Origin: Heptranchias perlo | Lineage: Eukaryota | Reading direction: 5' to 3' | DNA: 64,000 nucleotides | Assembly: GCF_035084215.1 (NCBI RefSeq) | Contig: NW_027139548.1 | Location: 7,936,001-8,000,000 of the forward strand | Shown here: positions 14,122 to 61,184 of the stretch, piece by piece | Numbering within the stretch: the stretch's first letter is position 1 | How the letters are laid out: every line of letters starts with the position of its first letter | Made by a program: the position numbers and the translations under genes | Notes under the pieces: generated by a model | Databases searched by the model: none | The model's input: the letters and a program-made list of their open reading frames with translations, nothing else | Told to the model about the DNA's origin: nothing

Positions 14122-15140
14122 TACAGAGTCCGACTCTACACTCGGATAGACACACACTAACACTGTATACAGAGACTGACTCTTCACTCGGATAGACACA
14201 CACTATACACTATATACAGAGACTGACTCTTCACTCGGATAGACACACACTAACACTGTATACAGAGACTGACTCTTCACTCGGATAGACACACACTATA
14301 CACTATATACAGAGACTGATTCTTCACTCGGATAGACACACACTATACACTGTATACAGAGACTGACTCTTCACTCGGATAGACACACACTATACACTAT
14401 ATACAGAGACTGACTCTCCACTAGGATAGACACACACTATACACTATATACAGAGACTGACTCTTCACTCGGATAGACACACACTATACACTATATACAG
14501 AGACTGACTCTTCACTCGGATAGACACACACTATACACTATATGCAGAGACTGACTCTTCACTCGGATAGACACACACTATACACTGTATACAGAGACTG
14601 ACTCTTCACTGAGATAGACACACACTATACACTGTATGCAGAGACTGACTCTCCACTAGGATAGACACACACTATACACTATATACAGAGACTGACTCTT
14701 CACTCGGATAGACACACACTATACACTATATACAGAGACTGACTCTTCACTCGGATAGACACACACTATACACTATATACAGAGACTGACTCTTCACTCG
14801 GATAGACACACACTATATACTGTATACAGAGACTGACTCTTCACTCGGATAGACACACACTATACACTGTATACAGAGACTGACTCTTCACTGAGATAGA
14901 CACACACTATACACTGTATACAGAGACTGACTCTTCACCAGGATAGACACACACTATATACTGTATACAGAGACTGACTCTTCACTAGGATAGACACACA
15001 CTATACACTATATACCGAGACTGACTCTTCACTAGGATAGACACACACTATACACTAAATACAGAGACTGACTCTTCACTCGGATAGACACACACTATAC
15101 ACTATATACAGAGACTGACTCCTCACTGGGATAGACACAC
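14122..15140. repeat. Minisatellite, 47-bp unit, ~21 copies
   Basis: Unit cagagactgactcttcactcggatagacacacactatacactatata, period 47 (14174, 14221...). Confidence 0.95.
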
Positions 15141-15779: not shown

Positions 15780-16518
15780 TCACATGTCCACTCTCAGTGG
15801 GCGTCTTGTGTCCTGCAGCGACTTCAGCTCATTCTTTCCGTTTGAACTGAACTGATTCTGCCTCAGCCTGAAACAGATTAAAGATTAAACAAGAAATAAA
15901 CAGATTGCACAACAGCGTAAATAACAGGGAGACTGGGCTTAATATTACAATAATAATTGGAGACAAATATCACCCATGATAGTGAATGAATCCCATCTAT
16001 ATTTTATTTATTGCATTAAACATTAACACAAGCACTCACCGGATCCGCTCCAGACTCCTGCAGGTCAGTATGAGGCGGCGGAGAGCGGGGATAGATTGGT
16101 CTGTGAAGTCGTTTAACCCGAGGGACAGACCCGTCAGTGACCGGTTTGTGCTGAGAGCGGAGACGAGATCGTCCGTACAAGAATCTGTGAGACCGTTTTT
16201 CCATAGACTGGGGTCGGAGAGAGAGAAATAACAGGAATCAAGGTTAAATCTCCAGTGTTTATTAATAATAATATTACTGATACTCATTATATCCAGTGTT
16301 AGACATCCAGTTATTATAAACACAATCTCAAACAGTCTGATACTTACCCCAGTTTCTATATTTTACAGTCCGGGTTCCTCAGAGCCGCAGACAGTAGTTT
16401 CACTCCTGAATCTTCCAGTTTATTATTGTTCAGCTACAGCTCTGTCAGTGATCGTTTTTTACTGAGAACAGAGGCGAGATCCTCGGCACAAGAATCTGTG
16501 AGATCGTTGTCATCCAGG
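15780..16518 (-). pseudogene. NLRC3/NLRP-like gene, 3' LRR exons (16348-16518, 16040-16207, 15780-15867)
   Basis: Three AG/GT-bounded phase-2 exons. 171 nt: LDDNDLTDSCAEDLASVLSKKRSLTEL*LNNNKLEDSGVKLLSAALRNPDCKI*KL, with TAG at 16434-16436 and 16356-16358. 168 nt: LWKNGLTDSCTDDLVSALSTNRSLTGLSLGLNDFTDQSIPALRRLILTCRSLERI. Terminal: LRQNQFSSNGKNELKSLQDTRRPLRVDM*. Confidence 0.85.
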
Positions 16519-20300: not shown

Positions 20301-20384
20301 TCTTTTCTTTACAGTGAGGTCCTGTAAATGGAGCTTGACTTCTCAACCACCCTGTTCAGTTCAAGGGTTGATGTTGCTCCGTCC

Positions 20385-22320
20385 CACTGAACCAGCCCTC
20401 CACCGAAACCCCACTGACCAGGCCCCACACCGACACCCTACTGATCAGGTCACATATCGAAACGCCACTGACCAAGTCCCACACCGACACCCCACTGACC
20501 CAGTCCCACACCGACACCGCACTGACCCAGTCCCACGCCGACACCCCACTGACCCAGTCCCACACCGACAACGCACTGACCCAGTCCCTCACCGACACCC
20601 CACTGACCCAGTCCCACGCCGACACCCCACTGACCCAGCGCCAAACCGAAACACCACTGAACCAGTCACACACCGGCACCCCACTGAACCAATCCTAAAC
20701 AGAAACCCCACTGACCAAGTCCCACACCGACACCGCACTGACCCAGTCCCACACCGACACCCCACTGACCCAGTCCCACAACGAAACCCCACTGACCCAG
20801 TCCCACACCGAAACCCCACTGACCCAGTCCCACGCCGACACCCCACTGACCCAGTCCCACACCGACATCCCACTGACCCAGTCCCACACCGACACCCCAC
20901 TGACCCAGTCCCACACCGACACCCCACTGACCCAGTCCATCACCGACACCCCACTGACCCAGTCCCACACCGACACCCCACTGACCCAGTCCCACACCGA
21001 CACCCCACTGACCCAGTCCATCACCGACACCCCACTGACCCAGTCCCACACCGACACCCCACTGACCCAGTCCCACACCGACACCCCACTGACCCAGTCC
21101 CACACCGACACCCCACTGACCCAGTCCCACGCCGACACCCCACTGACCCAGTCCCACACCGACACCACACTGACCCAGTCCCACACCGACACCCCACTGA
21201 CCCAGTCCCACACCGACACCCCACTGACCCAGTCCCACACCGACACCCCACTGACCCAGTCCCACACCGACACCCCACTGACCCAGTCCCACACCGACAC
21301 AGCACAGACCCAGTCCCACACCGAAACCGCACTGACCCAGTCCCACACCGACACCCCACTGACGCAGTCCCACACCGACACCCCACTGACCCAGTCCCAC
21401 ACCGACACCCCACTGACCCAGCCCCACACCGACACCTCACAGACCCAGTCCCACACCGACACCCCACTGACCCAGTCCCACAGCGACACCCCACTGACAC
21501 AGTCCCACACCGACACCCCACTGACCCAGTCCCACACCGACACCCCACTGACCCAGCCCCACACCGACACCTCACAGACCCAGTCCCACACCGACACCCC
21601 ACTGACCCAGTCCCACACCGACACCCCACTGACCCAGTCCCACACCGACACCCCACTGACCCAGTCCCACACCGACATCCCACTGACCCAGTCCCACACC
21701 GACACCCCACTGACCCAGTCACACACCGAAACCCCACTGACCCAGTCCCGCACCGACACCCCACTGACCCAGTCCCACGCCGACACCCCACTGACCCAGT
21801 CCCACACCGACACCCCACTGACCCAGTCCCACACCGACACCGCACTGACCCAATCCCACACCGACACCCCACTGACCCAGTCCCACACCGACATCCCACT
21901 GACCCAGTCCCACACCGACACCCCACTGACCCAGTCCCACACCGAAACCCCACTGACCCAGTCCCGCACCGACACCCCACTGACCCAGTCCCACGCCGAC
22001 ACCCCACTGACCCAATCCCACACCGACACCCCACTGACCCAGTCCCACACTGACATCCCACTGACCCAGTCCCACACCGACACCCCACTGACCCAGTCCC
22101 ACACCGAAACCCCACTGACCCAGTCCCGCACCGACACCCCACTGACCCAGTCCCACGCCGACACCCCACTGACCCAGTCCCACACCGACACCCCACTGAC
22201 CCAGTCCCACACCGAGAGCCCACTGACCCAGTCCCACACCGACACCCCACTGACCCAGCCCCACACCGACACCTCACAGACCCAGTCCCACACCGACACC
22301 CCACTGACCCAGCCCTGCAT
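20385..22320. repeat. Minisatellite, 27-bp unit, ~70 copies
   Basis: Unit ccccactgacccagtcccacaccgaca. It produces the spurious HRHPTDPVP and VSVWDWVSG ORFs. Confidence 0.97.
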
Positions 22321-22790
22321 CGACACCGCAGTAACGGGGAGTGAGAGCAGACACTCCAATTTTAATGACTGCATTGTAAAGTTTGATGTGTTTCAGGTAG
22401 TGAGTATTAGAGTAAGTGTGACGCTTACAGAAAGTGTGCGTTGTAAATACGACTTTTAATTCATTACTCGTGAATCTCGATGGCTTTGCTCATACTTGGA
22501 CAGATGACCTGGAATGTGATCTCACTGCATTAGTTGAAACAGGCCAGAATGGCAGGCGGGGAGCAATCGTATCTCTTCGGAAGGTATTGAAACAGCCTTT
22601 ATCAATATAAGAAAAGTATTATTAAACCATGGAAAAGGGAGTCTTACATGGTATATGTATCTATATAACCTACTGCTCAGATACAAAATGGTCCTACTAC
22701 TGGACTGCCGAATCCGTGTATAGGAGCTTACACTCAATGTTTCGGATATAGATTGGAAACAACATCTCTTGTTCTGAGATCGAACAGATT

Positions 22791-22804
22791 GTTACCATGG
22801 TAAC
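22791..22804. promoter_or_regulatory. Perfect palindromic RFX X-box
   Basis: GTTACCATGGTAAC matches the RFX consensus GTTRCCATGGYAAC. A G|GTAAGT donor follows at 22822. Confidence 0.45.
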
Positions 22805-23959
22805 AGAGGAAACCAGTCACGGTAAGTAACTGAAACGGAAATAACAAAACCAACTTCACGTTTCCTGAGTTTAGTTAAGACGAAGATTAACCCTGAACAT
22901 TCAGAAAGTTTTCCTAACCATGAAGCTCCGATTCAATGATGGATTTTTTTTACGCTAGGCCTGATACTGCGGATTGACTGAATGCACCGTCAGTTCCAGT
23001 ACAGAACATTAACCAGCGCCGCATCTACATCGATAAAGTAGTCACATTGATAGAAATAGGCCCTGTCAGCTCTGGAAATCTAGTGGTCTTAAAACATCTA
23101 AATCTGTAACAGTGACCACTTAAATTACTGCTAAAATACTCAATTCGATGGCAAAATATCTGATAGTCACCACCTTTGTACATCTGAAACGTAGCAAAAT
23201 TGACTAAATTTTATGACATTTGCTTTAAATCCGAGAGGGATCTGCAAGGACCGGGCTCCAACTCTGGCACGTAAAGTTATCGAGTTCATTAATTCTTGAT
23301 CCACTCTGTTTACAAGAGTTTGTTCCCTCCGATTGTTCACATCCCCCGGAAACTCACCAGCTTGAACAACAGGCTCGGTGGGCCCCTTGTTCCCAAATCA
23401 GCTCCAATACTGAACCTCAGTCCGCCGCTCCAGATGACCCAACACAGCCCTGTTATTAATTTATTCGCTACTGTTTCCGCCCTTCTCCCCAGTGAAGGCC
23501 CTGTCCTTTGCTCGTTCTCTCCCCGCAGCAGCACTGCTCTGATCCCAACAAACCCCATCACAATGCTCGAAATTACCAGCCAGTTTCCCCCCCCCCCAAA
23601 GTTTCCTGTATTAAATGCCAACTATTCCCTCCGCCAGCCGCTCTCAGTCAATCAATCCCTGCTTATTCAACACACAGCCCAGTTTCTGCCCCGTTGAATG
23701 CTGCGGTTTACGATAATCGGTGTTTCTCTAGAGTTTACGAGAGAAACGCCAGTGCTGTCTCTCGGATTGCCGAGATATCAGGAAGACCAACAGCTTCCGG
23801 GATCATCCGTCCCTTCAGGTTCAGGGCAGAGTATTCCTGTTTGATTTTGTCCCTTTTCTTAGATCCCTGGTCCGCCGGCGTGGGCTTCCTGCAAATCCCC
23901 AGAGTTTGGGGTGGAAGGGTGTCATTTTATTTCTGCGTTTTGGACAAACCGGCGCTGTT

Positions 23960-24131
23960 TGATCTGACTGGGCCCATCCTCCCCGGGTTATAAACTGTCT
24001 GATCTCACTGGGCCCATTCTCCCCGGGTTAAAGACTGTCAGATCTCACTGGGCCCATTCTCCCCGGGTTACAGACTGTCTGATCTCACTGGGCCCATTCT
24101 CCCCTGGTTTCAGACAGTCTGATCTCACTGA
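23960..24131. repeat. Tandem repeat, 40-bp unit, ~4.5 copies
   Basis: gatct(c/g)actg recurs at 23961, 24001, 24041, 24081 and 24121. Confidence 0.9.
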
Positions 24132-24419
24132 CCCTGTTCAGTAGATTCCACGGGAGTTTATATCCAGGACCATCCCCTCTATCACGACCCGGGTCAGTAC
24201 ATTCCCCTGTAGCTGATGCTGACAGTAATCTTCCCTCTTGCTTTAATAAACCAAATGGCCTCCTGTGAAACAGAAAGTAAATGATTGTACAGCCTGGAAC
24301 AGGATCACAGAGGGTAAAATAGGGCTGATGAGTTAGGATTAACCGGACAGGCGGGGCCATCCTCCATCCTGCAGAGCTCACTCCCGCTCTCTGCTGAGTA
24401 AAAACCGTTACTGTTACAC

Positions 24420-24850
24420 TTTAAATTCACTTCCTGTTTTATATAAAACACTAGTTGAGACAGGTTTACTCAGTATGAGAGCCCGACCCCTGTAACCCGG
24501 GGAACGATCTAAATTCTCACCCTCAGTCAGAGTTCAGTCCGCGCCGCCGATCATAATATTCACAAAGACCCGCGACTGGGAATCCCGGGATTCACGGGGG
24601 ATGCAATACTGCGTCTGCGCGGGAGAGCAAAGGCATTTTGACAGCAGTGCGCCTGCGTGAGAGAGCAGGCGTGCTTTGTCACCAGTGCGCCGCCTTGTCA
24701 TTTCATGCTGATTGTGCCCACACTGCGCCTGCGTGATATTCTGCTTTTCGCCTCCCGGTCTAAAAGCTAAAGTGAAGTTTCTCGGGGCTGCCGGGAGGGG
24801 TCACACTGGTTACCTCGGAGAGGGAACATGCGCAGTCCACCGGGGCATTA
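24420..24850 (-). promoter_or_regulatory. CpG-rich candidate promoter, probably for the minus-strand NLR
   Basis: Several NRF1-like TGCGC(C/A)TGCG motifs (~24610, 24648, 24724, 24828). A TATATAAAA-CAGGAAGT (TATA+ETS) sits on the minus strand at ~24428-24445. Splice-like sites lie downstream (GTGAG ~24382, ctgtttcacag ~24264). Confidence 0.4.
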
Positions 24851-25960
24851 AGGGTCATCTTGATTGGTGGGCACCGCAAATCATAAAGTGAGAGTTTATT
24901 ACAGTGTAAATAGATTGATGTTTAATTATATTAATGGCGCCTCCTCAGTTTGAGGAGGATCTTGTGCAGTTTCTTTTCTGTTAGTGACACTGGGCAACCC
25001 AGCGTCATCCCTATTGGTTTATTTGAAATAGACAACTGAAGCTCCACCTTCTCTGGCCACAAAACTTCACATTTAAATAACATCAAGCTGAATAACATCG
25101 TCAAACAAGGTTCAAGCTCCAGAGTAAAATCAGGGGCCTGACGCTGAGCAGCATTAATGAGCTGCCCAGAGTGGTCAGATGTGACTGAGTAGTGAGCAAG
25201 ACCTTGTTCACAACAGCTCCTGAGAGAAAGAACAGTGACATTTCCCGAACACCCGCCCCCCACTCTATAAGTCTCCCACACTTTTCATTGAATATCATTG
25301 TATTTCTTACATAGTTCAAAATTACCTTGTTATTTGATTTTCACCATCAGCTTTCTTCCACGAACCCTCCGAACGCCTCCTTTTGCTCGTATCCCCTTAT
25401 TACAATCTCTTACAAATTATTGCTCCTTGATAATTACTGTCAGCTCCCTTTTATCTTCAAAATAACTCTATTTGTACATGAATGCCTTCTTTTGAGAAAG
25501 CCGATTATCTCCCGTTCAGAGATTATCAACCTGCAACTCGTCCATCTCGTTTTTAACGTTCCCGTTCTTTTTCCACTCAAACCATCATTTTTCAGTTCCG
25601 TATGATCGCACATTCCGCGTTTCTACCGGCCGCTTTCTCAGTTTCTTAGTTCTACACACATATTTACACATTGAGCATTTGCTTTTCAATTAACCCAGTT
25701 ATCCTCGTGAAAGAACTTAATCTGTAATTTTATCATCGAACATTTAGTATTCCCCACAGCTGATCCGCTTGTTGATTTCCATTTTCCCAAGCAATAAATC
25801 TAGATCAGTCCAACTTTTTATCTGATAAACACTGCCTGCTGCTGAAGGCTGTTTATTGTGGGTCTATCCTCCCCCTCCTCTCCCTGAGTCTCTCATTTCC
25901 TCATCTCGATTCCAACTGGCCTGGCAATCAATACGTGACATTATACAGGCAGAGAGCGAT

Positions 25961-27655
25961 ATAGAGTCATAGAGTCATAGAGTCATAGAGTTATACAGCA
26001 CGGATAGAGGCCCTTCGGCCGATCGTGTCCGCGCCGGCCATCAAGCCCAATCTAATCTAATCCCATATTCCAGCATTTGGTCCGTAGCCTTGTATGCTAT
26101 GGCATTTCAAGTGCTCATCCAAATGCTTCTTGAATGTTGTGAGGGTTCCTGCCTCCACAACCCTCTCAGGCAGTGAGTTCCAGACGCCAACCACCCTCTG
26201 GGTGAAAAAGTTCTTTCTCAAATTCCCTCTAAACCTCCCGCCTTTTACCTTGAATCTATGTCCCCTTGTTATAAAACCCTCAACGAAGGGAAAAAGCTCC
26301 TTAGTATCGATCCTATCTGTGCCCCTCATAATTTTGTACACCTCAATCATGTCCCCCCTCAGCCTCCTCTGCTCCAAGGAAAACAAACCCAATCTTCCCA
26401 GTCTCTCTTCATAGCTGAAGCGCTCCAGCCCTGGTAACATCCTGGTGAATATTCTCTGCACCCTCTCCAAAGCGATCACATCCTTCCTGTCGTGCGGCAA
26501 CCAGAACTGCACACAGTACTCCAGCTGTGGCCTAACCAGTGTTAAATACAGCTCCATCATAACCTCCTTGCTCTTATATTCTATGCCTCGGGTAATAAAG
26601 GCAAGTATCCCATATGCCTTCTTTACCACCTTATCTACCTGTTCCGCCGCCTTCAGGGATCTGTGAACTTGCACACCAAGATCCCTCTGACCCTCTGTCT
26701 TGCCTAGGGTCTTCCCATTCATTGTGTATTCCCTTGCCTTGTTAGTCCCTCCAAAGTGCATCACCTCGCACTTTTCCGGGTTAAATTCCATTTGCCACTG
26801 TTCCGCCCATCTGACCAACCCATCTATATCGTCCTGCAGACTGAGGCTATCCTCCTCACTATTTACCACCCTACCAATTTTTGTATCATCAGCGAACTTA
26901 CTGATCATACCTTTTACATTCATATCCAAGTCGTTAATGTAGACCACAAACAGCAAGGGCCCCAGCACAGATCCCTGTGGTACCCCACTGGCCACAGGCT
27001 TCCAGTCACAAAAACAACCTTCGACCATCACCCTCTGCCTTCTGCCACTAAGCCAGTTTTGTATCCAAAGTGCCAAGGCAGCCTGGACTCCATGGGCTCG
27101 TACCTTCTTGACCAGTCTCCTGTGCGGGACTTTATCGAAGGCCTTACTGAAATCCATGTATACCACATCCACTGCGTTACCCTCATCCACACGCCTAGTC
27201 ACCCCCTCAAAAAATTCAATCAAATTAGTCAGACATGATCTTCCCTTGACAAAGCCATGTTGACTATCCCTGATTAATCCTTGCTTCTCCAAGTGGAGAC
27301 TAATTTTGTCCTTCAGAATTTTTTCCAATAATTTTCCGACCACTGGCCTGTAGTTCCCCGGTTTTTCCCTACTCCCCTTCTTGAATAATGGTACTACATT
27401 AGCGGTTCTCCAGTCCTCTGGCACATCCCCTGTGGCCAGAGAGGTTCTGAATATATGTGTCAGAGCCCCCGCAATCTCCTCCTTTGCCTCACACAGTAGC
27501 CTGGGATACATTTCGTCCGGGCCTGGGGATTTATCCATTTTTAGGCCTGCTAAAACCGCCAACACCTCCTCCCGCTCGATGTTAATATGTTCGAGTATAT
27601 CACAGTCCCCCTGTCGTATTTCGCTGTCTACGTCGTCCTTCTCCATAGTGAAAAC
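25961..27655 (-). mobile_element. Young 5'-truncated CR1 LINE with an open RT frame
   Basis: ORF 26057-27646 (529 aa) carries the full RT motif set, with a small in-frame deletion at YRPV-VGK. (ctatgact)n tail. Confidence 0.95.
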
Positions 27656-27659
27656 ATAT

Positions 27660-27815
27660 CGAGAGGGAGAGAAGTAGAGAGGGAAAGAGAGTTATAGAGG
27701 GAGTGGGGGGAGAGATGAGAGAGAGAAAGGGTGAGAGAAAGGGAAAGAGAAAGAGATGGAGAGAGAGAGACTTGGAGAGAGAGGTAGAGAGGGAGATAGA
27801 GTGAGGGAGACAGAC
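27660..27815. repeat. (GA)n-rich simple repeat
   Basis: gagaga/ggga runs. Confidence 0.7.
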
Positions 27816-28181
27816 AGTCATTTCAATCATGGCCAACATTCAAATATTTTTCTCACTACTGAGAGACGACACACGGAGTGAATGTTCTGAATTATGCTCT
27901 ATTAACTTAATGGAGAGAAAGACATAGGAAGGGATATGGATGGACGCAAATCCCGGATATGTCCCCCCACTCTGCACCCCATAGGATGAGATTTGAAACA
28001 AGGAGCACTGGTTTGTAAAATTTACCCTGTGTCTCAGAAAGAAGGGTCAATGGAAATGGGCCCTGGATCTGGAATCGGGTCAGTAAAACAAGTCTGAGAA
28101 GCTCTACCTTAGTGAATGTCGGGGGTAGAAGACTCTGATCTGATCTGTTCGGATCAAAGCAATTCGCACTCTCATTCATCG

Positions 28182-29085
28182 GAAAATAGGAACAGGAGTC
28201 GGCCATTCAGCCCCTCTAGCCTTTCCCCCATTCAATGAGATCATGGCTGATCTGTATCATAACTCCATTCACCCGCCTTGGCTCCATATCCCTTAATACC
28301 CTTGATTAGCAAACTATACGATCTCGGATTATAAATTATTAATTCAGCTAGCATCTACTTCCTTTTTTAGGATAGAGTTCCAACCTTTCCGTGAAGAAGT
28401 GTTTCCTAACTTCTGTCCTGAATGGCCTGGCTCTGATTTTAAAGTGATGTCCCCTTGTCCTCGACTCCCCCACCAGAGTAAAATGTTAATCTCAATCAAT
28501 TCCTTTCAAAATCCTAAAACTATCAATCAAATCACCCCTTAACCTTTTATGCTCCATGGAATGTAAGCAACTTTATGTCTCTCCTCCTGATTTAATGCTG
28601 GAGCCCTGGTAACAGTCTGTTGAATTTGCACTGCACTCCTTCAAGGCTATTACAGCCTTTCTATGCTGCTTTGCGCAGAACTATACACAGTACTCCAGGT
28701 GAGGTCCAACCTGGCCTTTGTATAGCTGTAACAAAACATCCTCCCACTATAGTCTAGCCCTCTCGATATAAAGGCTAACACTCCATTACTCTTTTTAATT
28801 AATTTTTGACCTGACGACTTTTAGTGAGCTGTGTACATGGACCCTTAAATCTCATTGGACCTCCACTGTTCCTAGCTTTAAAAAAACATACTCAGATCTA
28901 TCCTGTTTTGGTTCAAAATGTATGACCTCACATTTACCTGCGTTGAAATCCATCTGCAACAGTTTTGGCCACTCACTTTAATCTATCAATGTCTCTTTGT
29001 AATTTTATGCTCCTGTCGACATTGCATAATATGCCACCTATCTTTGTGCCACTGGCAAACTTGGATATAGGGCACTCTGTTATGG
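28182..29085 (-). mobile_element. CR1 LINE 3' portion, decayed
   Basis: 3' UTR aggaacaggagtcggccattcagcccc, plus remnants of the PHLEYC and SKFA..TKIGG coding segments. Confidence 0.8.
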
Positions 29086-29492
29086 AATCTGTTATGTTGG
29101 AACAGAATGGGAGCACGATGAAACATCATTTCTAAGGATTACCTCTTAACTAGCCAGGGTATACTTGACTTGAAATAAACCTGCTTTACAGAAAGGTTTT
29201 CATAAAGGAGGAAGGAAGCGTAGAGGAAGTATATCGTGGTCTAAGTATTCACCGAGGCGGGACATTTTCTACTCCCGCAATCTGTCGGCGGCATCCTAAA
29301 TGTGGGGAAACTTCCTCAGATCGATTTCTACTGAAATCCTAAACTCGTCCTCTTCGACTGCTCTTCCCTAGAAATGAAGAACATAGCAATTCTCCTGTTA
29401 TGTTCATGATATCGCGAACACACAGTGAGAACATGAACTTCTTCCCTCTGAATAATACTTCATATTTACAGCACATTAAATGTAACAATTAC

Positions 29493-29574
29493 CGGAGCGG
29501 TTTCTTCACGTCATTTTGCGTTTCTCATTCCAGACTGGTCCAGATGATACTGGTTGGTTGACTGGGCATCGCGC
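29493..29574 (-). pseudogene. Putative connecting-peptide exon of the TCR-like gene
   Basis: ggccAG|GCGCGATG...CTCCG|GTAATT. The phase-1 frame reads GAMPSQPTSIIWTSLE*ETQNDVKKPL (82 nt, contains a stop). Confidence 0.35.
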
Positions 29575-29855
29575 CTGGCCAATGAAACGCACACATTTAA
29601 AGGAAGCGGATTGGAGGTGTTATGCACCAATCTATGAACAGAACTGGAGCTCAGACCCTTAACGGCTCTCTACTCTACACGCACTTTCACCGCGCCTTTT
29701 TTTCCGACTCCTGGATATACTTCAATGGTTTTCCGCCAGTCCCGGGTTCCAGTATGTAATCCAGGCAGGCACTTCGCTCCTAAACAACGGTTACTTCATT
29801 TGAAAAGTTAACGCGCTTTATAAATGGAACCTCTTCCTTTTGGTGCATATAAAAA

Positions 29856-30365
29856 TATTTACATTTCGACAGCGCCTTTCACGACCTCAGGACGTCCCAA
29901 AGTGATATGAAGTAATATTTGAAGTGTAGTCACTGTTGTAATGTAGGGAAACGGGGCAACCAATTTGCGCACAGCAAGATCCCACCAACAGCAATGTGAT
30001 AATGACCAGATCATCTGTTTTAGTGATGTTGGTTGAGGAATAAATATTGGCCAGGACATCGGGGAGAACTCCATTCTCCTTCTTCCAAAAGTAGCCCTGA
30101 GATCTTTTCGGTCTACCTGAGGGGATAGACGGGGCCTCGGTTTAACGACTTTTCGGAAAACGGCATCTCTAACAGGGCAGCACAACCTCAGTACTCAACC
30201 TCGAACAATATAGGACTCCAGTACTGACCCTCGGTCAGTGAAGGACTCCCTCAGTACTGCACTGGGAAAGTCGGTCTGCATTATGCGCGCAAGTCTCCGG
30301 AGTGGGTTTGAACCCACGATCTTCTGACCCAAAGGTGGGAGTGCTGCCCACTGATCCACCGCTAG
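29856..30365 (-). mobile_element. tRNA-derived SINE with L2-like tail (DeuSINE/SacSINE-like), near full-length
   Basis: Tail tttacatttcgacagcgcctttcacgacctcaggacgtcccaaagtg, a conserved core, and a head with a gggttcaaaccc B-box. Confidence 0.85.
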
Positions 30366-30441
30366 CACCTGGTCCTATTATTGATCTACTCCAATTCATA
30401 ATGACGAGCAATAAAATGTTGAAACGCACCGTTTCCATAAC

Positions 30442-30741
30442 CTGTTCGCAGGAGGTTGCCGTCCGGTGCGGTGACTCTTTCCACGTTGCAATCGATCACA
30501 TCCGCGGGTCTCCATGGGTCCATAGGTAGAAAACCAGCCGCCGTGTAACTGCCGTTTCCCGTGTACAGAGGGGATGAACCCAACCTCTTGACTGCCGTGG
30601 AGGAAGATTTCATGGACACGTTCATTTCTTTCGGATAGAAATCCATCACCAAGCAAACTGCTGCTGTGTTTCCGCTCCTACTCTGAGAGTCGATTGGAGG
30701 GAAAAAGCGGTGCGCTATTGGCCTGGAATGTTTCGTCAGCT
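30442..30741 (-). CDS. TCR delta/alpha-like C1-set constant-domain exon (300 nt, phase 1-1, open)
   Basis: gacAG|AG CTG...ACA G|GTTATG. It encodes KLTKHSRPIAHRFFPPIDSQSRSGNTAAVCLVMDFYPKEMNVSMKSSSTAVKRLGSSPLYTGNGSYTAAGFLPMDPWRPADVIDCNVERVTAPDGNLLRT, with C1 hallmarks CLVxDFYP, G-x-Y and a second Cys, and no C-strand Trp as in TCR alpha/delta C. Confidence 0.8.
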
Positions 30742-31924
30742 CTGTCATTGAAATTAATAACACTATATTCTGGCGCACAATTAAAAGAGAATATTGCTCT
30801 TAATTCCTTTTCAAAAACGCACATCAACACCAGGGGTTCTGTATAAAATACGACAGAAATAGTAACATAAATATGAACCTTAGTTCAACCATTGGATTAA
30901 TATCATTTTCAACTGGACCAATGAGCGGCACATGTAAACAGAAAGAACGGTGAAAGTCAGCGAAGCCCGAAGGTTAAGACTCTTAGCAGAGTGGAGGAAC
31001 GGAGATACAAAGTTGTTCCCGACGCATAGATGGTTCCAGGAATCCAGAAAACCAGATTATTAAAAGCAAAAGGACAGGCACAAAGGCCGATTTAAAAAGG
31101 CAAATGGGATTCCGGAGTTTAGACACCTGTTGTTAAATGTGGGCGCGTTGAACATAAAAAGTAGCAAGTGAGATTGAATTGACATCAGATATCAGTCAGG
31201 CAACAGAATACTGGGCGCTGTTGGGCATCCCGTTATATTGGAACTATGGGGAGGGGACGACAAAGATTAACTAGATTGATGCCAGCAATGAAAGATTGTA
31301 GTTCGGACGAAAGACTCCAAAACCTGTCTGTTGTTGTTTTACTACATCGATGCAGGTTGAGGAGCATATTCTGGGAGAGCGAGCGCAGGCCCGAGGAACA
31401 GAATGATATCCTTCTCTACGGCAAAGCTTAGGATTCTATGAATTAATAGCCTCGTTCGCTTTTTCTAAGGTTCCACCCAGCTGTCTCTCTCTTTCTTCCT
31501 TACTTTCTCTCTCTCTCTTTCTTTCTTGTTTGCTTTTAATCTTTTTCCTTCTCTTTCTATCTTCCTTTCTATTTATCATTAGTTCTGTTTGACATTTTAA
31601 CCAAAGACTTTCGTGGCACTATATCGCCATTTTTAAGCAAATTAATCTTAAGGGACAGTGAGTTATTGTTCGGGTTACATAAAAAAAACGCAAGCTTCAC
31701 CTCGCAGAAATTATTGGATCTTTGAAAAGTAAAACTGAAAGACAAGAGCCCGGAAATGACCAGAACCAGTTTATACCCCGAATGGGGAAAAGCTCGACTT
31801 GAACAGATAAACAGAACCAATTTATACCCTGAATGGGCAAAAGATCGACTTGCCAATAAAAAGCAGCCCTGAACGAGAAAAGAGATGAGTGACAACAAAG
31901 AAATCATCACAAAAATAAATTCAC

Positions 31925-32475
31925 AATTATGTTAGGAAAATGAGCAGGGTCAGACCAATGTGGGTCCCTTAAGAACAGATAATGGTGATATTGTAAATTA
32001 AAACATGGAGTTGGTGGACATGTTAAATAATTACTTTGCATCAGCAATTACAGTAGAAGAAGAGGATACCCTGCCAGACACCCCAAGGTAACACATTTTG
32101 GATCAGGAACGGGCACTCACTATAATTAACGTAAGCAAATTAACAGTATGGCACTAATGAGTGACAAATCCCCAGAACTAGATGCTTTCCACGCTAGGGT
32201 TTTAAAGGAAGTGGGTGAGAACACTGCAGATACCCTAATTATAATCTTCCAAAGTTCTCTCGATTCTGGAACTGTTCCTTTCGATTGGAAAATTGCACAT
32301 GTCAGTCCACTATTTAAGAAAGGTGAGCGAGGGAAACCTGGGAATTATAGACCTAACATCTGTTGTCGGGAAATCACTAGAGTTTCTAATTAAGGATCGA
32401 GTGACTGAACACCTTGAAAATGTTCAGCTGATCAGAGAGAGCCAGTATGGATTTATAAAGCGTAGAACATGCCTG
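31925..32475 (+). mobile_element. CR1 internal fragment
   Basis: DKSPELDAFHARVLKEV...DWKIAHVSPLFKKG...GNYRP, then SQYGF. Confidence 0.8.
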
Positions 32476-32549
32476 AGAAGCGTCAGCCGGCATCACTGTC
32501 CTTGTTGGAATCGTGTGGCTTCCTGAACGAACGAATGTACGAACGAACT

Positions 32550-32700
32550 TGCTCTTCTTCGCAATAGTGCCTTGGAATCTTTTACTTCCACCTGAGTGGG
32601 CTTCGGTTTAATATCTCATCCGAAAGATGGCAGCTCCGACAGTGCAGCACTCTCTCAGCACTACACTGGAGTGGCAGCCTAGATTATGTGCTCAAGTCTC
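32550..32700 (-). mobile_element. SINE core fragment
   Basis: gctcttcttc...catccgaaagatggcagctccgacagtgcagcac matches the SINE core at ~30070-30290. Confidence 0.65.
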
Positions 32701-32754
32701 TTGTAAAAGAAGCCCTTGGATGGCCTGATATCTTCCCTTTTCATGGTCCACACG

Positions 32755-33205
32755 TGTCGATACCGGGTCTGGAAGGGATAAATGAATTTAAATGACAGGA
32801 TACATCGACTTGGCCTGGGTATTCGTTTGAGTTGGGAAAGTTGTGGGATGACCTAACTGAAGTGTTTAAAATGTTAAAGGGATTCAATAGGGGAGATTCA
32901 GTGAAACTCTTTCCTCTGGTGGGGGAATTCAGAACAAAAGGGCATAATCTTAACATTAGACCGAGGCCTCGCGAGAATGAAATCAGGAAGCGTTTATTTC
33001 ACACAAAGTGTAGTGGAAATCTGGAACTCTCTGCCACAAAATGGCTGTGGATGTCTGGGGGACAACTTATTTTTTCTAGAGTGAGAACTGTAGATTTTAC
33101 TTAGGGAAGGGTATTAAGGGATATAAGTCCAATTCAGTTGTGTTAGAGGTTCGCAATGATCTGGCTGAACAGTCCCGAGGGGCTGAATGGCCTCCTCCTG
33201 CTCTT
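32755..33205 (+). mobile_element. CR1 3' fragment
   Basis: DLTEVFKMLKGF...RTKGHNL, and the 3' UTR ggctgaatggcctcctcctgctc. Confidence 0.75.
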
Positions 33206-33411
33206 ATGGCCCGATGTAGGAATGAGTAATCGGGGAAAGCACACAGGGCAGGCTGGGGCCTGTGGGATTTTAACCCCAGTACACACTCGATGTTTGGGTG
33301 TTAGAAGGAAGAGAGACATGTGGAACCAAATACAGTTAGAAAGAAAGAACACGACGAAGAGGAAAGCGAAAGAAAAGGGGGACTGCTAATAATATTATTA
33401 ATCCTCCTTAA

Positions 33412-33767
33412 TTGGCTTCACAATGTGCCTGACCCCATCTCCAAACGTGGGCTTGTCTAATGGCGGCTCCTTTCCCTCGAAGACGCAGTAATAAATCCCG
33501 CTGTCCTTTGTCTCGGCTTTCTTGATTCGTAAGGTCGTTTTCTTCTTGGAGCTCTGAGGAGCTCATCTCCGTCCTTGGTGCCCTGTGACCGCAAGTTGTC
33601 GAGTATCAGCACCAGCGGACCGCTCTCCATCTTCTCTTGCTTCAACCAGAAGAGGATTTCCCCGTCGGCCAAAATTGCTCCAGTCTGGCACCGCAACTCG
33701 ACCGCGACCCCCTCGGCCGTCGAGATACTGACCAGTGTTTGCTTGAATCACCCGATCGAGTGACCCT
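33412..33767 (-). pseudogene. Germline-joined TCR-like V-J exon, disrupted
   Basis: tgtatttcAG| then the phase-1 frame GHSIG*FKQTLVSISTAEGVAVELRC(33688)QTGAILADGEILFW(33646)LKQEKMESGPLVLI. After a frameshift at ~33545-33575 it reads SSKKKTTLRIKKAETKDSGIYYC(33485)VFEGKEPPLDKPTFGDGVRHIVKP. The expected donor is mutated (A|TTAAGG), and there is no RSS. Confidence 0.85.
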
Positions 33768-34039
33768 CTGAAATACAGCATAATCAGAAAGTAATGATAT
33801 TCGATGGAAACTAAATAGAAAGCAACGTTTCTCTTAATAAAATAAATCAAAGAAAGGCAGTCTTGCATTTACACAGCGCCTTTCACAACTTCAGGACATC
33901 TCAAAGTGCTTCACTCAGTCTGCATGTGGCTCCAGCCCTACATCATGTAGTTGGCCCTTAACGCCATCTGAAGTGGTCTAGCAAACAAACTTAGTTGTAG
34001 ATCAATAAACGAGTGTCCTGTCTGCGTTGCCAAGTAGAG

Positions 34040-34300
34040 AATCATTCAGTCATCAGCACAGAATGAAGCCATTCGGACCATCGTGCCTCTGCTGGCTCTT
34101 TGAAAGTTCTTTTCAATTAGTCCCATTTCTTGCACTTTCCCCATATCCCTGAGATTCTGTCCTCTTGAAGTATTTACCCAATTCCATTTTGAAAGTTACT
34201 ATTGAATCTGCTTTAACCGTCCTTTGAGGCAGTGAATTCCAGATCATAACAACTCGCTGCCTAAAAAACATTCTCCACACCTGTCCGCTGGTTGTTTCAC
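34040..34300 (-). mobile_element. CR1 3' fragment (preceded by a SINE tail at ~33850-33915)
   Basis: gccattcggaccatcgtgcc 3' UTR and ttgaatctgct...ttccagatcataacaactcgctgc. Confidence 0.7.
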
Positions 34301-34853
34301 GTCTCTGGGCTTATCTTAAACTGTATGAATACACTTTTCTCTTTATTTTAAGTAGCTCTTTTTCCAAATATTTCCAATGGAAAATGGCTAAATAATCGTG
34401 AAACGCGACAGTCACATGACAGAGTGGTTAATGCTGTGCGGTCCGTAGTTCTTGTAATAGCTGCAAATATTATATGTAAACTGGAATGTTAATGCATCGT
34501 TTTATTAGAGGTACACGAAATAACCTAAAGAAAGCGGCAAGATACATACGTTGGAAATAAGCCCAAAGCATCAGCTGCAATAACACAGTCTCCATTTTAA
34601 CCGAGAATGTTCCGCGAGCTCCTTCACCTAATGGGCATCACAGCTTATGGCGTCCGAGCAGTGGAATCAGCGGGTCAATCTCGTCTCCACTTCGCCAACC
34701 TCAACACTCGAGAGCTCACACCGCGTTCTGCCTTGTTTCCACCTCTGGCAATAATTCAAATCGAGACTGGATATCCAGAAGGCCAGAAATGTGAAAGATA
34801 AGGTAAAAAGCAAAGTCCCGTACCAAAATCTGACTTACCCTCACACGGCCTGT

Positions 34854-35085
34854 GTCAGCCTTGGCTTAGAGGCAACACTCTCCCTTCTGAGTCAGAAGTT
34901 TACAGCGAACAAGCCGCAGTCCAGAGATTTGAGAACACAATATGGGCTGATATTTCACCGTCGTTAAACCGAGGCCCCGTCTGTCCCTCTGAAATGACGT
35001 AAAAGATCCCGCAGAACGTTTTGGAAGAAGTACAGGGAGAGTTCTCTTCCTCTCCAGGACAATTTGTGCTCTCAATATCCGTTTA
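34854..35085 (+). mobile_element. tRNA-derived SINE, 5' half
   Basis: gtcagccttggctt...ctgagtcagaag head and gttaaaccgaggccccgtctg core. Confidence 0.7.
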
Positions 35086-51296: not shown

Positions 51297-51972
51297 GAAA
51301 GGAGCCTGATCCGAATCATTTGCCCACAACTCCTGCAAGAAGAGAAAAGAACATACTTATCAACACGACAATCACAAATTCAATTCTGAAGTTTCCAAGC
51401 TAGCATCAGGAGACACGTCGGTGGATTTTGTAAAGTCAGCTCTCTGATCCCCTCATGTGATGGACTAAATCGGCAGGCGGAACGCTAAGTGCAAGCAATG
51501 GCCATAAGGTACTTCCAGCAGCATCAGCTCGACCGTATCAAGGGCGAGTGAACAGACATCGAATCAAAGGTTATGATACAATGACGAATGTAGGGGACAA
51601 CCAATAACATGCACTCTACAGTCAACACTGCTGAAGACACCAATAGAAACCCGGAACAAACAGCCATTAGAAGCGATGGAAACTTCAATTCTTTGAGAAA
51701 GCTGTTGAATCGTCTATGTTGTAAATATCAGAATGTGACTTTAAAAGAAAAGCGGACATCTGTAAGAGTGGAATCCGTCACGGGCCTCTTCACTCTCACC
51801 AATCCTACAGCTGCTGGATCAAACTATGCAAATTATGACCATCCGCGAGCAGCGATCAGCCCAGGGGCAGCCTTAGCAAATACACCGGATGGAATGAGTT
51901 TGAAATGTACCACCCCTGAGGATGTCAATCACGATCAAACCGAGACAACAACGGAAGGAAAGAGAAACACAG
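51297..51972 (+). other. Candidate first coding exon of the + strand NLR (ORF from 51609)
   Basis: ttttcttaccAG acceptor. The non-repetitive ORF MHSTVN...ETTTEGKRNT ends G|GTACAT (phase 1), compatible with the downstream phase-1 exons. No recognisable domain. Confidence 0.3.
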
Positions 51973-52844
51973 GTACATGTTGAGACACTTATTATAATTC
52001 ATAATATCGAACACCGGGGACGATATAATAAGAGTGAATGGCCGTCCAAACCATTTATGTTAAGAATATACCACCATACAACAAACGCTTTTTGTGGCAG
52101 TGGTAATTTTATCCTTTCTGGTGTCAAAATTCTTATGGCAGTTAAATATTCCCCCCAGCGATTTTGATACTCATCCCTCTGGGTCTGAAATTGGTCTTGA
52201 CCAGTAGCCTGAAATGGGCGATAGCGTATTGGCCGCCCATTTTACAGGCTGTCCGATCTTCTTCATTATTGACTTCAATGGAAAAGGAAACCGAGCAGCG
52301 CATCAACCAGGCCGCCAATTCGCTCTCGCACGTTTTCTGCTACCATCCAAGAACAATTCAAACCCCCTATTCCTTCATCCAAGTCATTAATATATGTGGT
52401 GAGATGCTAACGGCCCAGTACAGATCCCTGGGGAACACCTCTTGTCACATCTGGCCAATCAGGTTTCGCCCCACTCTATGACTCCTCCCTCCCAATTCAT
52501 CACCAACCTATTGTCACAAAGTTGCCTCGAATTCCGAGCACTTTCACTTTTGCTTCTCATATTTTGTGCAGAACCTTATAAAATGCATTCGGGAAGTCCA
52601 TATAGACAAGGACCAGAGACATTCCTTAGTCCACCATGCTGGTCATCTCCTCACAAAATTTAACTGGATTAATCAGTCATGACCCACCCTTCACCAATTG
52701 TTGTGACTCTCTTTGATCAGCTCATATTGTTCAAGTGCTCAGCCAGTCTGTCATTGACTTAGGTTCGAGTAATTTCTCACAACTGATGTTAAACTGACGG
52801 GTCAGTAGTTTCCTGGTTTCTCCCCTCCTCCCTTCTTAAATACC

Positions 52845-60847: not shown

Positions 60848-61184
60848 GTATTTTCACCTGCTGTTAAGTAAGATATCCAGCTATAACTTTAATATGTTAG
60901 ACGTCACACCTTGTTGCAGATATTAAGAGAGTTGTCAGAGCATGAAATACTTTGCCATAGGGTGTAGTTGGGACAGAAAGCTTTGCATCTGTGAAACGAA
61001 TCTGGCTAAATTCTTGAAGTAGATGAAAACACAGGCCTGTAGAAGGGAGAACAGGATCGTAGAATTATCTAGAATGTACAGCACAGAAACAGACCATTCG
61101 ACCGAACAGGTATATGCCGGTGTTCATGCTCCACACGAGCCTCCTCCTATCCTTCTTCATCTAATTTGATTCAGGTCAGAGCAT

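What the first reader, a model, noticed from the sequence alone, without database searches (positions are those of the whole stretch)
29380..33767. Stand-alone germline-joined V-J + TCR-delta/alpha-like C gene: a non-rearranging T-cell-receptor-like chain
Seen in sequence (minus strand): one AG-bounded exon at 33412-33767 contains a complete V-set domain (C at 33688, W at 33646, LRI...KDSGIYYC at 33485). It is fused directly to a CDR3-like loop and a J-type segment, VFEGKEPPLDKPTFGDGVRHIVKP, and no heptamer/nonamer RSS is visible. A 2.67-kb intron (30742-33411) leads to an intact phase-1 C1 exon (TAAVCLVMDFYPKE...GSYTAAGFL...IDC) that lacks the C-strand Trp, like TCR alpha/delta C. The J segment (DKxTFGxG...VKP) is TCR alpha/delta-like. 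The ORF track splits the V across three frames, so automated annotation would likely miss it. Established knowledge: cartilaginous fish have germline-joined Ig genes, and non-rearranging VJ-C1 genes (UrIg, PRARP/VJC1) are known, whereas shark TCR loci are normally rearranging. Inference: this is either a TCR alpha/delta-type gene pre-joined in the germline or an undescribed invariant TCR-like lineage. The retained J-C intron argues against an mRNA retrocopy.
Basis: partly seen in the sequence, partly recalled or inferred. Interest (0 to 1): 0.92.

Follow-up and report, generated by a model that had tools for sequence, protein, structure and literature searches.

The report
Dead copy of pre-joined TCR-like gene
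This stretch of (apparently shark) DNA holds the broken remains of a T-cell-receptor-like gene whose variable and joining parts were already fused in the germline; this copy is dead, but an intact relative in a sawshark points to a little-known kind of ready-made T-cell-receptor chain.

Summary

The gene is not intact. Read against its only close relative, a Pristiophorus japonicus protein auto-named 'immunoglobulin lambda-1 light chain-like' (P0072/P0001; 57-64% identical), it has four defects:
- an in-frame TGA (33750-33748);
- a one-base frameshift (about 33555-33554);
- TT in place of the GT splice donor at the J end (33411-33410);
- no recognisable connecting-peptide, membrane or tail exon in the 30 kb downstream.

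DNA contigs of a public run show no indel in either exon. Three small putative RNA runs do not cover the exons.

The relative does look like a TCR chain. Its membrane segment matches almost only TCR delta/alpha constant regions in the PDB, with the arginine and lysine aligned. In my tree the C domain sits beside elasmobranch TCR-delta-type C domains, with moderate support; a lambda affinity is not rejected.

Verdict: a pseudogene relic of a germline-joined, TCR-delta-like V-J-C family, outside any TCR locus. The family, not this copy, is the interesting part. [quoted passage not shown]

The parts
34550..34595 (-). Split leader exon: ATG at 34595-34593, reads METVLLQLMLWAYFQ plus one base, donor GTATGT at 34549, phase 1
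   Evidence: Sequence read; ORF list; 12 of 14 residues identical to the start of P0072
33768..34549 (-). Leader-V intron, mostly repeat (SINE-like) sequence
   Evidence: Sequence; very high contig depth for 33775-34347 in all four runs
33412..33767 (-). Germline-joined V-J exon (V-set domain, CDR3-like loop, J motif FGDGVRHIVKP), disrupted
   Evidence: no RSS
33748..33750 (-). In-frame TGA stop seven codons into the V exon (..GHSIG*FKQ..), where P0072 has Thr
   Evidence: No difference is listed at this place among the rows of the DNA run shown (54 rows not shown)
33554..33555 (-). Frameshift: two bases stand where one codon is expected. The reading changes from ..TKDGDELL to SSKKKTTLRIKK..
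   Evidence: no indel row in the V exon in DNA run X1
33410..33411 (-). Lost splice donor: TT where the J-C intron should begin with GT
   Evidence: X1 contig 33179-33512 has no gap and one substitution, elsewhere. The only nearby GT (33421-33420) would splice in phase 0 into AGC TGA
30742..33409 (-). Rest of the J-C intron, largely LINE/SINE fragments
   Evidence: repeat-level depth for 31865-33392
30430..30741 (-). Open C1-set constant exon, phase 1 to phase 1, donor G|GTGCGT. 57-60% identical to P0072, with Met at the canonical Trp position
   Evidence: X1 contig 30158-30898 is identical

Best explanation
The locus is a non-functional relic of a gene family in which V and J are fused in the germline ahead of a single TCR-delta-like constant domain. 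The leader, V-J and C exons survive.

Shown:
- The V-J exon has a premature TGA and a one-base frameshift.
- The J-end splice donor is TT.
- No exon for a connecting peptide, membrane segment or tail can be recognised in the 30 kb downstream.
- So no receptor chain can be made here.

The intact relative, P0072 of Pristiophorus japonicus, encodes leader, V-J, C, a cysteine-bearing connecting peptide, a membrane segment with Arg and Lys spaced as in TCR delta/alpha, and a short tail.

Inferred:
- The intact family members are invariant TCR-delta-like chains that assemble with CD3 through that Arg/Lys pair and pair through the connecting-peptide cysteine.
- The family arose when RAG joined V to J in the germline of a small V-J-C-delta cluster, as is known for shark Ig clusters.
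- The copy in this window later decayed among LINE and SINE insertions, in a region that also holds NLR-like exons.
For: Exon structure and lesions.

Relative:
- It was the only hit above 42% identity out of 1.84 billion cluster representatives (P0001: E 1.2e-31, 60% identity; 71 hits at E<=0.001).
- Its source names and species are; the sequences are.
- tblastn of P0072 on the window matches residues 1-14, about 20-93, 94-137 and 132-243, in order on the minus strand. Nothing matches residues 244-327.
- No hydrophobic R/K-x4-K reading frame lies downstream of the C exon on that strand.

Reads:
- DNA run X1 covers the exons at depth 46-76 with no indel.
- One contig is identical over the whole C exon; another spans the J end and the TT.
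- Putative RNA runs X7-X9 have zero depth on the leader, V-J and C bins.

TCR-delta likeness:
- P0072 aligns end to end with a Scyliorhinus TCR-delta-type chain, including the J and the membrane segment (E 4e-20).
- The last 84 residues of P0072 hit 22 PDB sequences at E<=10. Twenty are TCR chains: 10 delta, 9 alpha, 1 unspecified. The best six are all delta (E 0.008-0.022), with Arg and Lys aligned.
- In the tree, the window's C plus P0072 (support 98/74) is sister to 8 elasmobranch TCR-delta-type C domains (support 94/88).
- By Pfam the domain is C1-set, not the TCR-alpha C family (E 0.1 for the window's C exon; no hit at E<=1 for P0072).
- Language-model features of P0072 residues 138-327 are nearest to TCR-gamma C, pre-TCR-alpha and TCR-alpha C clusters.
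Against: - The C-domain signal is weak. The key branch is not starred, and the AU test does not reject a clade with four lambda C domains (p 0.108).
- The C exon alone looks most like Ig light-chain C, both by PDB sequence search and by language-model features.
- No labelled shark TCR alpha, beta or gamma, IgL sigma or kappa, or UrIg sequences were in the tree.
- The membrane-segment E-values are marginal (0.008 at best).
That its V-J is one exon is inferred from the window's exon and the shared CDR3.
- I do not know whether P0072 is a paralogue in the same genome or an orthologue in another species.
- X1 may be the sample the assembly was made from, so the lesions are confirmed in at most one extra data set and may be polymorphic.
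- The RNA runs are small, of unknown tissue, and only guessed to be RNA.
Confidence: 0.8

Rival explanations
1. It is a decayed germline-joined immunoglobulin light-chain (lambda-like) cluster of the V-J-C kind that is common in cartilaginous fish. On this view it has nothing to do with TCRs.
For: - NCBI's automatic name for the relative is 'immunoglobulin lambda-1 light chain-like'.
- The best PDB sequence matches of the C exon and of P0001 are lambda chains.
- Language-model features of the C exon are nearest to kappa and lambda C clusters.
- The AU test does not reject a clade with lambda (p 0.108).
- Germline-joined IgL clusters are known in sharks and skates (PMC2193156 and PMC2192082; I saw only the search listing and the start of each abstract).
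Against: - The relative continues past the C domain into a connecting peptide and a membrane segment that hit almost only TCR delta/alpha in the PDB. Light chains have neither.
- The window's C exon ends in a phase-1 donor, not in a Cys and a stop.
- The best tree puts the domain with TCR-delta-type C.
- A clade with lambda, kappa and a Xenopus Ig domain is weakly rejected (p 0.039).
- Met stands at the C-strand Trp position, as in shark and alligator TCR-delta-like C.
Confidence: 0.1
2. The family is an ancient V-J-C1 lineage that was never split by the RAG transposon, like UrIg, UrIg2 or NKp30. On this view it is not a TCR-delta cluster re-joined in the germline, and this locus is a dead member of that lineage.
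For: - The family falls outside, not inside, the elasmobranch TCR-delta clade, which includes a ray sequence.
- It has a V-J single exon with the canonical split leader, as described for UrIg and UrIg2 (PMC12227049, section 7).
- The window is not in a TCR locus.
Against: - There is a single C domain and a TCR-type membrane segment. Nurse shark UrIg2 has nine C1-type domains and epaulette shark UrIg2 eleven.
- The multi-C elasmobranch proteins lie far from it in the tree, though they were not labelled as UrIg.
- Only one species' annotation holds a close relative. That fits a young, lineage-restricted family better than an ancient one.
- Fast evolution could explain the position outside the TCR-delta clade.
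Confidence: 0.2
3. The gene at this locus is functional, and the apparent lesions are assembly errors or are bypassed.
For: - The C exon is an open 130-codon frame with both cysteines.
- The leader donor, V acceptor, C acceptor and C donor are intact.
- The frameshift returns the reading to a frame in which FR3, CDR3 and J are open.
Against: - There are three independent lesions of different kinds: a substitution to TGA, a one-base indel in non-repetitive sequence, and GT changed to TT.
- None is contradicted by the DNA contigs of run X1.
- The nearest alternative donor gives an immediate stop.
- There are no membrane exons.
- The putative RNA runs show zero depth on all three exons.
Confidence: 0.04
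4. The V-J join is a somatic rearrangement from lymphocyte DNA that was captured in the assembly.
For: None beyond the joined state itself. The tissue of the sequenced sample is unknown to me.
Against: - The contig across the J end and CDR3 has depth 37, like the other seven X1 pieces listed (39-67).
- The relative from another gene or species has a CDR3 of the same length with 11 of 18 residues identical from Cys to FGDG. The join is therefore inherited.
- The exon carries pseudogene lesions.
- There are no V, J or RSS elements nearby.
Confidence: 0.02

Closest known systems
Pristiophorus japonicus 'immunoglobulin lambda-1 light chain-like' isoforms X1/X2 (P0072, P0001; UniRef UPI00398E9A12 and UPI00398E5FDA)
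   Same: Same leader start, V framework, CDR3 length, J motif FGDGVR.IV, V-C junction (K..KHSRP) and C domain. Identity is 57-60% in C and 64% over FR3-J.
   Different: The relative is an open reading frame with a connecting peptide, a membrane segment and a tail. The window's copy has a stop, a frameshift and no GT donor, and none of those last parts. The database name is automatic, and I found no paper on the gene.
Elasmobranch TCR delta chains (e.g. Scyliorhinus XP_038644089.1 = P0049; Hemitrygon 'T cell receptor delta constant' = P0115)
   Same: J ending in ..RVIVE(P), Met at the C-strand Trp position, sister position of the C domain in the tree, and a membrane segment with Arg-x4-Lys and ..MTARVW in the relative.
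   Different: Conventional TCR delta is assembled from V, D and J segments with RSS. Here V-J is one germline exon without RSS. In one search, P0072 is 25% identical to P0049 over the whole aligned length (V through the membrane segment).
Germline-joined Ig clusters of cartilaginous fish (IgL and IgH)
   Same: V(D)J fused in the germline with the leader and J-C introns kept. Germline RAG activity is the accepted origin (PMC2193156, listing and start of abstract only).
   Different: Those are immunoglobulin genes. This constant region and the relative's membrane segment are of TCR type.
Marsupial TCR-mu V-mu-j
   Same: [quoted passage not shown] That TCR-mu's constant region is related to TCR delta is my recollection, not from a call.
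   Different: V-mu-j is the membrane-proximal V of a two-V chain and is thought to have arisen by retrotransposition. Here a single V-J exon keeps its split leader. The lineages are unrelated (mammal against shark).
UrIg / UrIg2
   Same: A non-rearranging V-J single exon with split leader in elasmobranchs, automatically annotated as IgL (PMC12227049, section 7).
   Different: UrIg2 has nine to eleven C1-type domains. This family has one C domain and a TCR-type membrane segment.
Pre-TCR alpha (PTCRA)
   Same: An invariant, non-rearranging chain with one C-like domain and an Arg/Lys membrane segment. Language-model features of P0072 residues 138-327 list two PTCRA clusters among the nearest (scores 0.94 and 0.92).
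   Different: PTCRA has no V domain and is reported only in amniotes (PMC9614664, passages). Pfam PTCRA does not match P0072 at E<=1.

Membership tests
Germline-joined antigen-receptor gene (cartilaginous-fish type) | V and J contiguous in one exon, with no heptamer/nonamer RSS between or beside them | tested here: met
   0 RSS-like sites in the window; no CACAGTG or CACTGTG within 150 bp of the exon; aligns across V-J to rearranged chains
Germline-joined antigen-receptor gene (cartilaginous-fish type) | Split leader and J-C intron retained (not a retrocopy) | tested here: met
   Leader exon 34595-34550 with phase-1 donor; 2.67-kb J-C interval
Germline-joined antigen-receptor gene (cartilaginous-fish type) | Join present in germline, not only in lymphocyte DNA | tested here: inconclusive
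   Single-copy depth across the join and a conserved CDR3 in P0072 argue for germline. The tissue of the DNA run is unknown.
TCR delta chain | Constant domain groups with TCR delta C domains | tested here: inconclusive
   Sister to 8 elasmobranch TCR-delta-type C domains, support 94/88, not starred. The AU test does not reject a lambda clade, p 0.108. No TRA, TRB or TRG of sharks in the tree.
TCR delta chain | Connecting peptide with Cys, and a membrane segment with Arg and Lys four residues apart | tested here: not met
   Not found in the window. Met in the relative P0072.
TCR delta chain | Somatic V(D)J assembly from RSS-flanked segments within a TCR alpha/delta locus or a V-D-J-C delta mini-cluster | tested here: not met
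   No RSS and no other V, J or C segment in 64 kb. The neighbours are LINE reverse transcriptases and an NLR-like exon.
Immunoglobulin light chain | C exon ends with the C-terminal Cys and a stop; no membrane exons | tested here: not met
   The window's C exon ends in a phase-1 donor after ..GYGNG. P0072 continues into a membrane segment.
UrIg / UrIg2 | V-J exon followed by several C1-type domains | tested here: not met
   One C exon here. P0072 has one C1-set domain. The feature is taken from PMC12227049, section 7.
UrIg / UrIg2 | V and C domains cluster with UrIg/UrIg2 | not tested
   No labelled UrIg sequences were available, and the paper's supplements are closed. Unlabelled multi-C elasmobranch proteins lie far away in the tree.
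Pre-TCR alpha | Single C-like domain without V; matches Pfam PF15028 | tested here: not met
   A V domain is present. No PF15028 hit for P0072 at E<=1.
Functional protein-coding gene | Open reading frame across all exons with canonical splice sites | tested here: not met
   TGA at 33750-33748, frameshift at about 33555-33554, TT donor at 33411-33410. No contrary reads.

The most novel reading that the evidence does not exclude
The intact relatives of this relic encode an invariant, germline-joined TCR-delta-like chain. It would reach the cell surface with CD3 through its Arg/Lys membrane segment. That would be the first germline-joined TCR gene outside marsupial TCR-mu. It could serve sharks as a ready-made partner chain: an innate-like gamma/delta-type receptor, or a surrogate chain that does the job pre-TCR-alpha does in amniotes, the only group in which PTCRA is reported.
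Probability: 0.35. Interest if true: 0.85.

Novelty: new variant of a known kind. Interest (0 to 1): 0.55.

Why it matters
Germline-joined antigen-receptor genes are well known for shark immunoglobulins. For TCRs, a 2023 paper states that marsupial TCR-mu is the only case (PMC7615758, passage).

This locus, read together with its intact sawshark relative, shows that a V-J exon fused in the germline sits ahead of a TCR-delta-like constant region in a cartilaginous fish. At least two copies exist, one of them dead.

If the intact copy is expressed and assembles with CD3, it would be an invariant TCR chain in the oldest jawed-vertebrate lineage. That bears on two questions:
- how RAG activity in germ cells reshapes receptor loci;
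- how T-cell development is checked in animals without pre-TCR-alpha.

The relative is filed in public databases as a 'lambda light chain-like' protein, so it is easy to overlook. The window's own copy is an ordinary pseudogene.

Tried and rejected
- SIRP-like V-C1 receptor (a lead from earlier scan notes): no SIRP appears among the best 60 PDB matches of the C exon or of P0001, and the relative has a TCR-type membrane segment. I did not test this further.
- Retrocopy: rejected, because two introns are kept.
- Extra copies in the window: tblastn of the C and V pieces found only themselves. The weak hits (E 0.4 and above) at 14164-15004 and 51702-53043 lie in repeat or LINE sequence.
- Membrane exon: a Kyte-Doolittle scan of 22000-30430 on the minus strand found only a SINE-derived hydrophobic stretch. 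An R/K-x4-K scan found nothing downstream of the C exon.
- More family members: the search for homologous proteins with P0072 returned only its own cluster (1 of 3117 candidates). With the C exon it returned nothing (1 candidate). The search of earlier findings by sequence with P0072 was blank.
- The second protein and query 'V2' were cut in the wrong frame by my mistake. Their results (a 0.067 phage-sheath hit) are meaningless and are not used.
- Literature searches for a described germline-joined TCR in cartilaginous fish found none: UrIg, shark, nonrearranging; PRARP, antigen receptor precursor, VJ-C1, germline-joined; germline-joined, TCR, shark, pre-T, nonrearranging; germline-joined, TCR, delta, elasmobranch. 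Subscription journals and supplements were not searched.
- (Pristiophorus japonicus, genome assembly, T cell receptor): none of the 10 papers listed holds the species name.
- I made no structure prediction, because a C1-set fold would not separate TCR delta from IgL.

Full report
WHAT IS THERE

Reading 29200-34900 on the minus strand and translating the three frames shows three colinear exons.

- A leader exon runs from the ATG at 34595 to 34550. It reads METVLLQLMLWAYFQ plus one base, and a GTATGT donor follows.
- After a 782-bp intron that is mostly repeat, a strong acceptor (ctgtatttcag) opens the V-J exon at 33767. The exon ends at 33412.
- The C exon follows 2.67 kb further on, at 30741-30430. 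It is bounded by an AG acceptor and a G|GTGCGT donor. Both introns are phase 1, as is usual for immunoglobulin-superfamily exons.
- Pfam calls the C exon C1-set (E 2.9e-10) and the FR3-J piece V-set (E 1.4e-4, below the family's cut-off).

THE V-J FUSION IS REAL

- FR3, a CDR3-like loop and a J motif (..DSGIYYCVFEGKEPPLDKPTFGDGVRHIVKP) are contiguous.
- Against the PDB this 47-residue piece aligns across the V-J junction to rearranged kappa V-J chains. Over its full length, to the final VKP, it aligns to TCR alpha, delta and mu chains.
- A scan for RSS-like sites (CAC-anchored heptamer, 12/23 spacer, nonamer) found 0 in the whole window on both strands, against 0.87 expected from shuffles. No CACAGTG or CACTGTG lies within 150 bp of the exon.
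- Two introns are retained, so this is not an mRNA retrocopy.

THE GENE IS BROKEN

A HMMER scan of 1.84 billion cluster representatives with the C exon gave 71 hits at E<=0.001. Only one was close: P0001 (E 1.2e-31, 60% identity). No other hit exceeded 42% identity.

P0001 and its sister P0072 are isoforms X2 and X1 of 'immunoglobulin lambda-1 light chain-like' of Pristiophorus japonicus (sequences).

tblastn of P0072 on the window matched, in order on the minus strand:
- residues 1-14, at the leader (12 of 14 identical);
- residues of about 20-93, in one frame of the V exon (E 1.3e-18);
- residues 94-137, in another frame (E 4e-13; 64% identity);
- residues 132-243, at the C exon (E 2.7e-38; 57% identity).

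Read against this intact protein, the window's copy has four defects.

1. In the frame fixed by the phase-1 leader splice, the seventh codon of the V exon is TGA (33750-33748: ..GHSIG*FKQ..). P0072 has Thr there.
2. After ..TKDGDELL (last codon 33558-33556) two bases stand where a codon is expected. The homologous reading, SSKKKTTLRIKK.., resumes at 33553 in another frame.
3. The base after the last J-exon base (33412) is T. The intron starts TTAAGG, not GT. The junction itself is conserved (V-K-P-K-L-T-KHSRP against V-E-S-K-I-A-KHSRP), so this is the ancestral splice point. The only nearby GT (33421-33420) would splice in phase 0 and read AGC TGA. Reading through gives a stop after five codons.
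4. Nothing in the window matches P0072 residues 244-327, which hold the connecting peptide, membrane segment and tail. No hydrophobic reading frame with the R/K-x4-K pattern lies downstream of the C exon on that strand. The downstream 30 kb is mostly SINE and LINE sequence.

ARE THE LESIONS ASSEMBLY ERRORS?

I laid contigs of one DNA run (X1) and three putative RNA runs (X7-X9), all of one sample, on 29000-34700.

- X1 covers the V-J bins at depth 76 and 46, the C bins at 52 and 64, and the leader bin at 79.
- None of the 9 indel rows listed falls in the V-J or C exon.
- One 741-nt contig is identical over 30158-30898, which is the whole C exon.
- One 334-nt contig covers 33179-33512 (the TT, the J and the CDR3) with no gap and one substitution, at 33434.
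- Three substitutions were listed in the V-J exon (33434, 33633, 33751). None is at the TGA, the frameshift or the donor. Fifty-four less well supported rows were not shown.
- X1 may be the sample the assembly came from. This excludes polishing errors but not polymorphism.
- X7-X9 have zero depth on the leader, V-J and C bins and cover only repeats. They are small (131-137 million letters), of unknown tissue, and RNA only by guess. Silence is therefore suggested, not shown.

GERMLINE OR SOMATIC?

- The contig across the join has depth 37, like the other seven X1 pieces listed (39-67).
- P0072 has a CDR3 of the same length: CVSKKQEPNLDMPMFGDG against CVFEGKEPPLDKPTFGDG, 11 of 18 residues identical.
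- The fused state was therefore inherited from a common ancestor of the two genes.

WHAT FAMILY IS IT?

By itself the C exon looks like an Ig light-chain C. The top PDB matches are lambda chains, and its language-model features are nearest to kappa and lambda C clusters. That explains the database name. The rest of the evidence points to TCR delta.

- P0072 isoform X1 continues past the C domain into ..NCSEK.., a membrane segment LSLLFIRLLLVKTLAISVLMTARVW, and a 26-residue tail.
- That 84-residue end hit 22 distinct PDB sequences at E<=10. Ten are TCR delta constant, nine are TCR alpha, one is an unspecified TCR, and two are an unrelated designed protein with no matched stretch. The best six are all TCR delta (E 0.008-0.022), with the Arg and Lys aligned to those of human TRDC. 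These E-values are marginal, but the hits are specific.
- P0072 aligns end to end with a Scyliorhinus TCR chain that has a VH-like V (P0049; E 4e-20). The alignment includes FGDGVRVIVE against FGNGTRVIVE and the membrane segment.
- The window's C, P0072, P0049 and an alligator TCR-delta-like protein (P0020) all have Met where Ig C domains have the C-strand Trp.
- I built a maximum-likelihood tree of 36 C-domain rows: the window plus 35 domains from 27 proteins. These were the proteins with usable names among the 115 counted plus those added. The tree joins the window's C to P0072 (support 98/74) and puts the pair sister to 8 elasmobranch TCR-delta-type C domains (94/88, not starred). Lambda, kappa, IgH and multi-C elasmobranch proteins lie apart.
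- The AU test does not reject a clade with four lambda C domains (p 0.108). It weakly rejects one with lambda, kappa and a Xenopus Ig domain (p 0.039).
- No shark TCR alpha, beta or gamma, no IgL sigma or kappa, and no labelled UrIg sequences were available. The supplements of the UrIg2 paper, which list such sequences, are closed.
- Pfam's TCR-alpha C family (PF09291) reaches only E 0.1 on the window's C exon and nothing on P0072. The domain is therefore not alpha-like.
- With the membrane part included, the language-model features are nearest to TCR-gamma C, pre-TCR-alpha and TCR-alpha C clusters. This is a lead only.

CONTEXT

The window is not a TCR locus. There are no other V, J or C segments. 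There are three long reverse-transcriptase frames (RVT_1), an NLR helical-domain exon at 59859-60926 (NLRC4_HD2, E 5.6e-13) and many SINE copies.

HOW IT MOST LIKELY WORKS

This copy does nothing. It cannot be translated through the V domain, it cannot splice J to C, and it has no membrane anchor.

For the intact family the reading is an inference. It would be an invariant chain with one fixed V-J domain and a TCR-delta-like C. It would be disulfide-linked to a partner through the connecting-peptide Cys and held in a CD3 complex by the membrane Arg and Lys, as established for TCR alpha and delta.

The origin I think most likely is RAG-mediated V-to-J joining in germ cells of a small V-J-C-delta cluster, the mechanism accepted for shark Ig clusters (PMC2193156; listing and start of abstract only). 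An earlier unchecked scan note reports a NAR-TCR mini-locus with its own C-delta in this genome, which would be the right kind of substrate. A primordial, never-split V-J-C1 lineage, as proposed for UrIg and UrIg2 (PMC12227049, section 7; PMC10751288, passages), is the main alternative for the origin.

COMPARISON WITH WHAT IS KNOWN

- It is not UrIg or UrIg2: it has one C domain against nine to eleven in UrIg2.
- It is not PTCRA: it has a V domain and no PF15028 match.
- It is not an Ig light chain: the relative has a membrane segment, and the C exon ends in a phase-1 donor.
- It is not a conventional TCR delta: there are no RSS.
- The nearest analogues are the germline-joined Ig clusters of cartilaginous fish and the germline-joined V-mu-j of marsupial TCR-mu.
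[quoted passage not shown] An eLife 2018 paper cites the same mammalian cases for germline-joined V exons in TCRs (PMC5931798, passage).
- My four literature searches found no description of such a gene in cartilaginous fish. Subscription journals were not covered.
- PTCRA is reported only in amniotes (PMC9614664, passages). That leaves room for the bold reading that the intact relative is a surrogate or innate-type partner chain.

VERDICT

The locus is a pseudogene relic, which is ordinary in itself. It belongs to a germline-joined TCR-delta-like V-J-C family that seems undescribed and is hidden under a light-chain name in one species' annotation.

The scan had noted other non-rearranging V-J receptor families on other DNA of this genome. 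I could not test whether any of them is this family.

I rate the novelty as a new variant of a known kind, and the interest as moderate (0.55). The interest rests on the family, not on this dead copy.

Noticed in passing
window 29399-29915: The DNA-run X1 contigs laid here differ from the window at 23 positions plus 1-2 gaps per roughly 260-290 nt (about 9%), at single-copy depth (45-48). For 29399-29624 no identical contig is listed. This may be a diverged haplotype, a paralogous copy or a local assembly problem just downstream of the C exon.
   Followed up: no
window 20314-22374: A roughly 2-kb tandem array is open in several frames on both strands (units such as PTDPVPHRH, or WDWVSGVSV on the other strand). 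It is a minisatellite-like repeat, seen only in the ORF list.
   Followed up: no
window 59859-60926 (+) and 16036-16323 (-): A 355-codon open frame has an NLRC4_HD2 helical domain (E 5.6e-13), and a 95-codon frame looks like leucine-rich repeats (no Pfam hit). The relic therefore lies near NLR-type sequence. An earlier scan note flags the first as an NLR exon that lacks its nucleotide-binding domain.
   Followed up: partly
window 29860-30360 and 33780-34350: SINE-like copies flank the relic's exons, and a related tail is repeated on both sides. Contig depth there reaches millions in the DNA run and hundreds of thousands in the putative RNA runs, so these elements are very abundant and probably transcribed.
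   Followed up: no
P0001 versus P0072 (Pristiophorus japonicus): The two annotated isoforms share residues 1-270 and then diverge. X1 has the membrane segment. X2 replaces it with a hydrophilic end, which may be a secreted or mis-spliced form.
   Followed up: no
window 33434, 33633, 33751: There are three single-base differences between the window and the DNA-run contigs inside the 356-bp V-J exon. Two fall on third codon positions, and one changes Lys to Glu. This level of variation is what a neutrally drifting pseudogene would show.
   Followed up: partly
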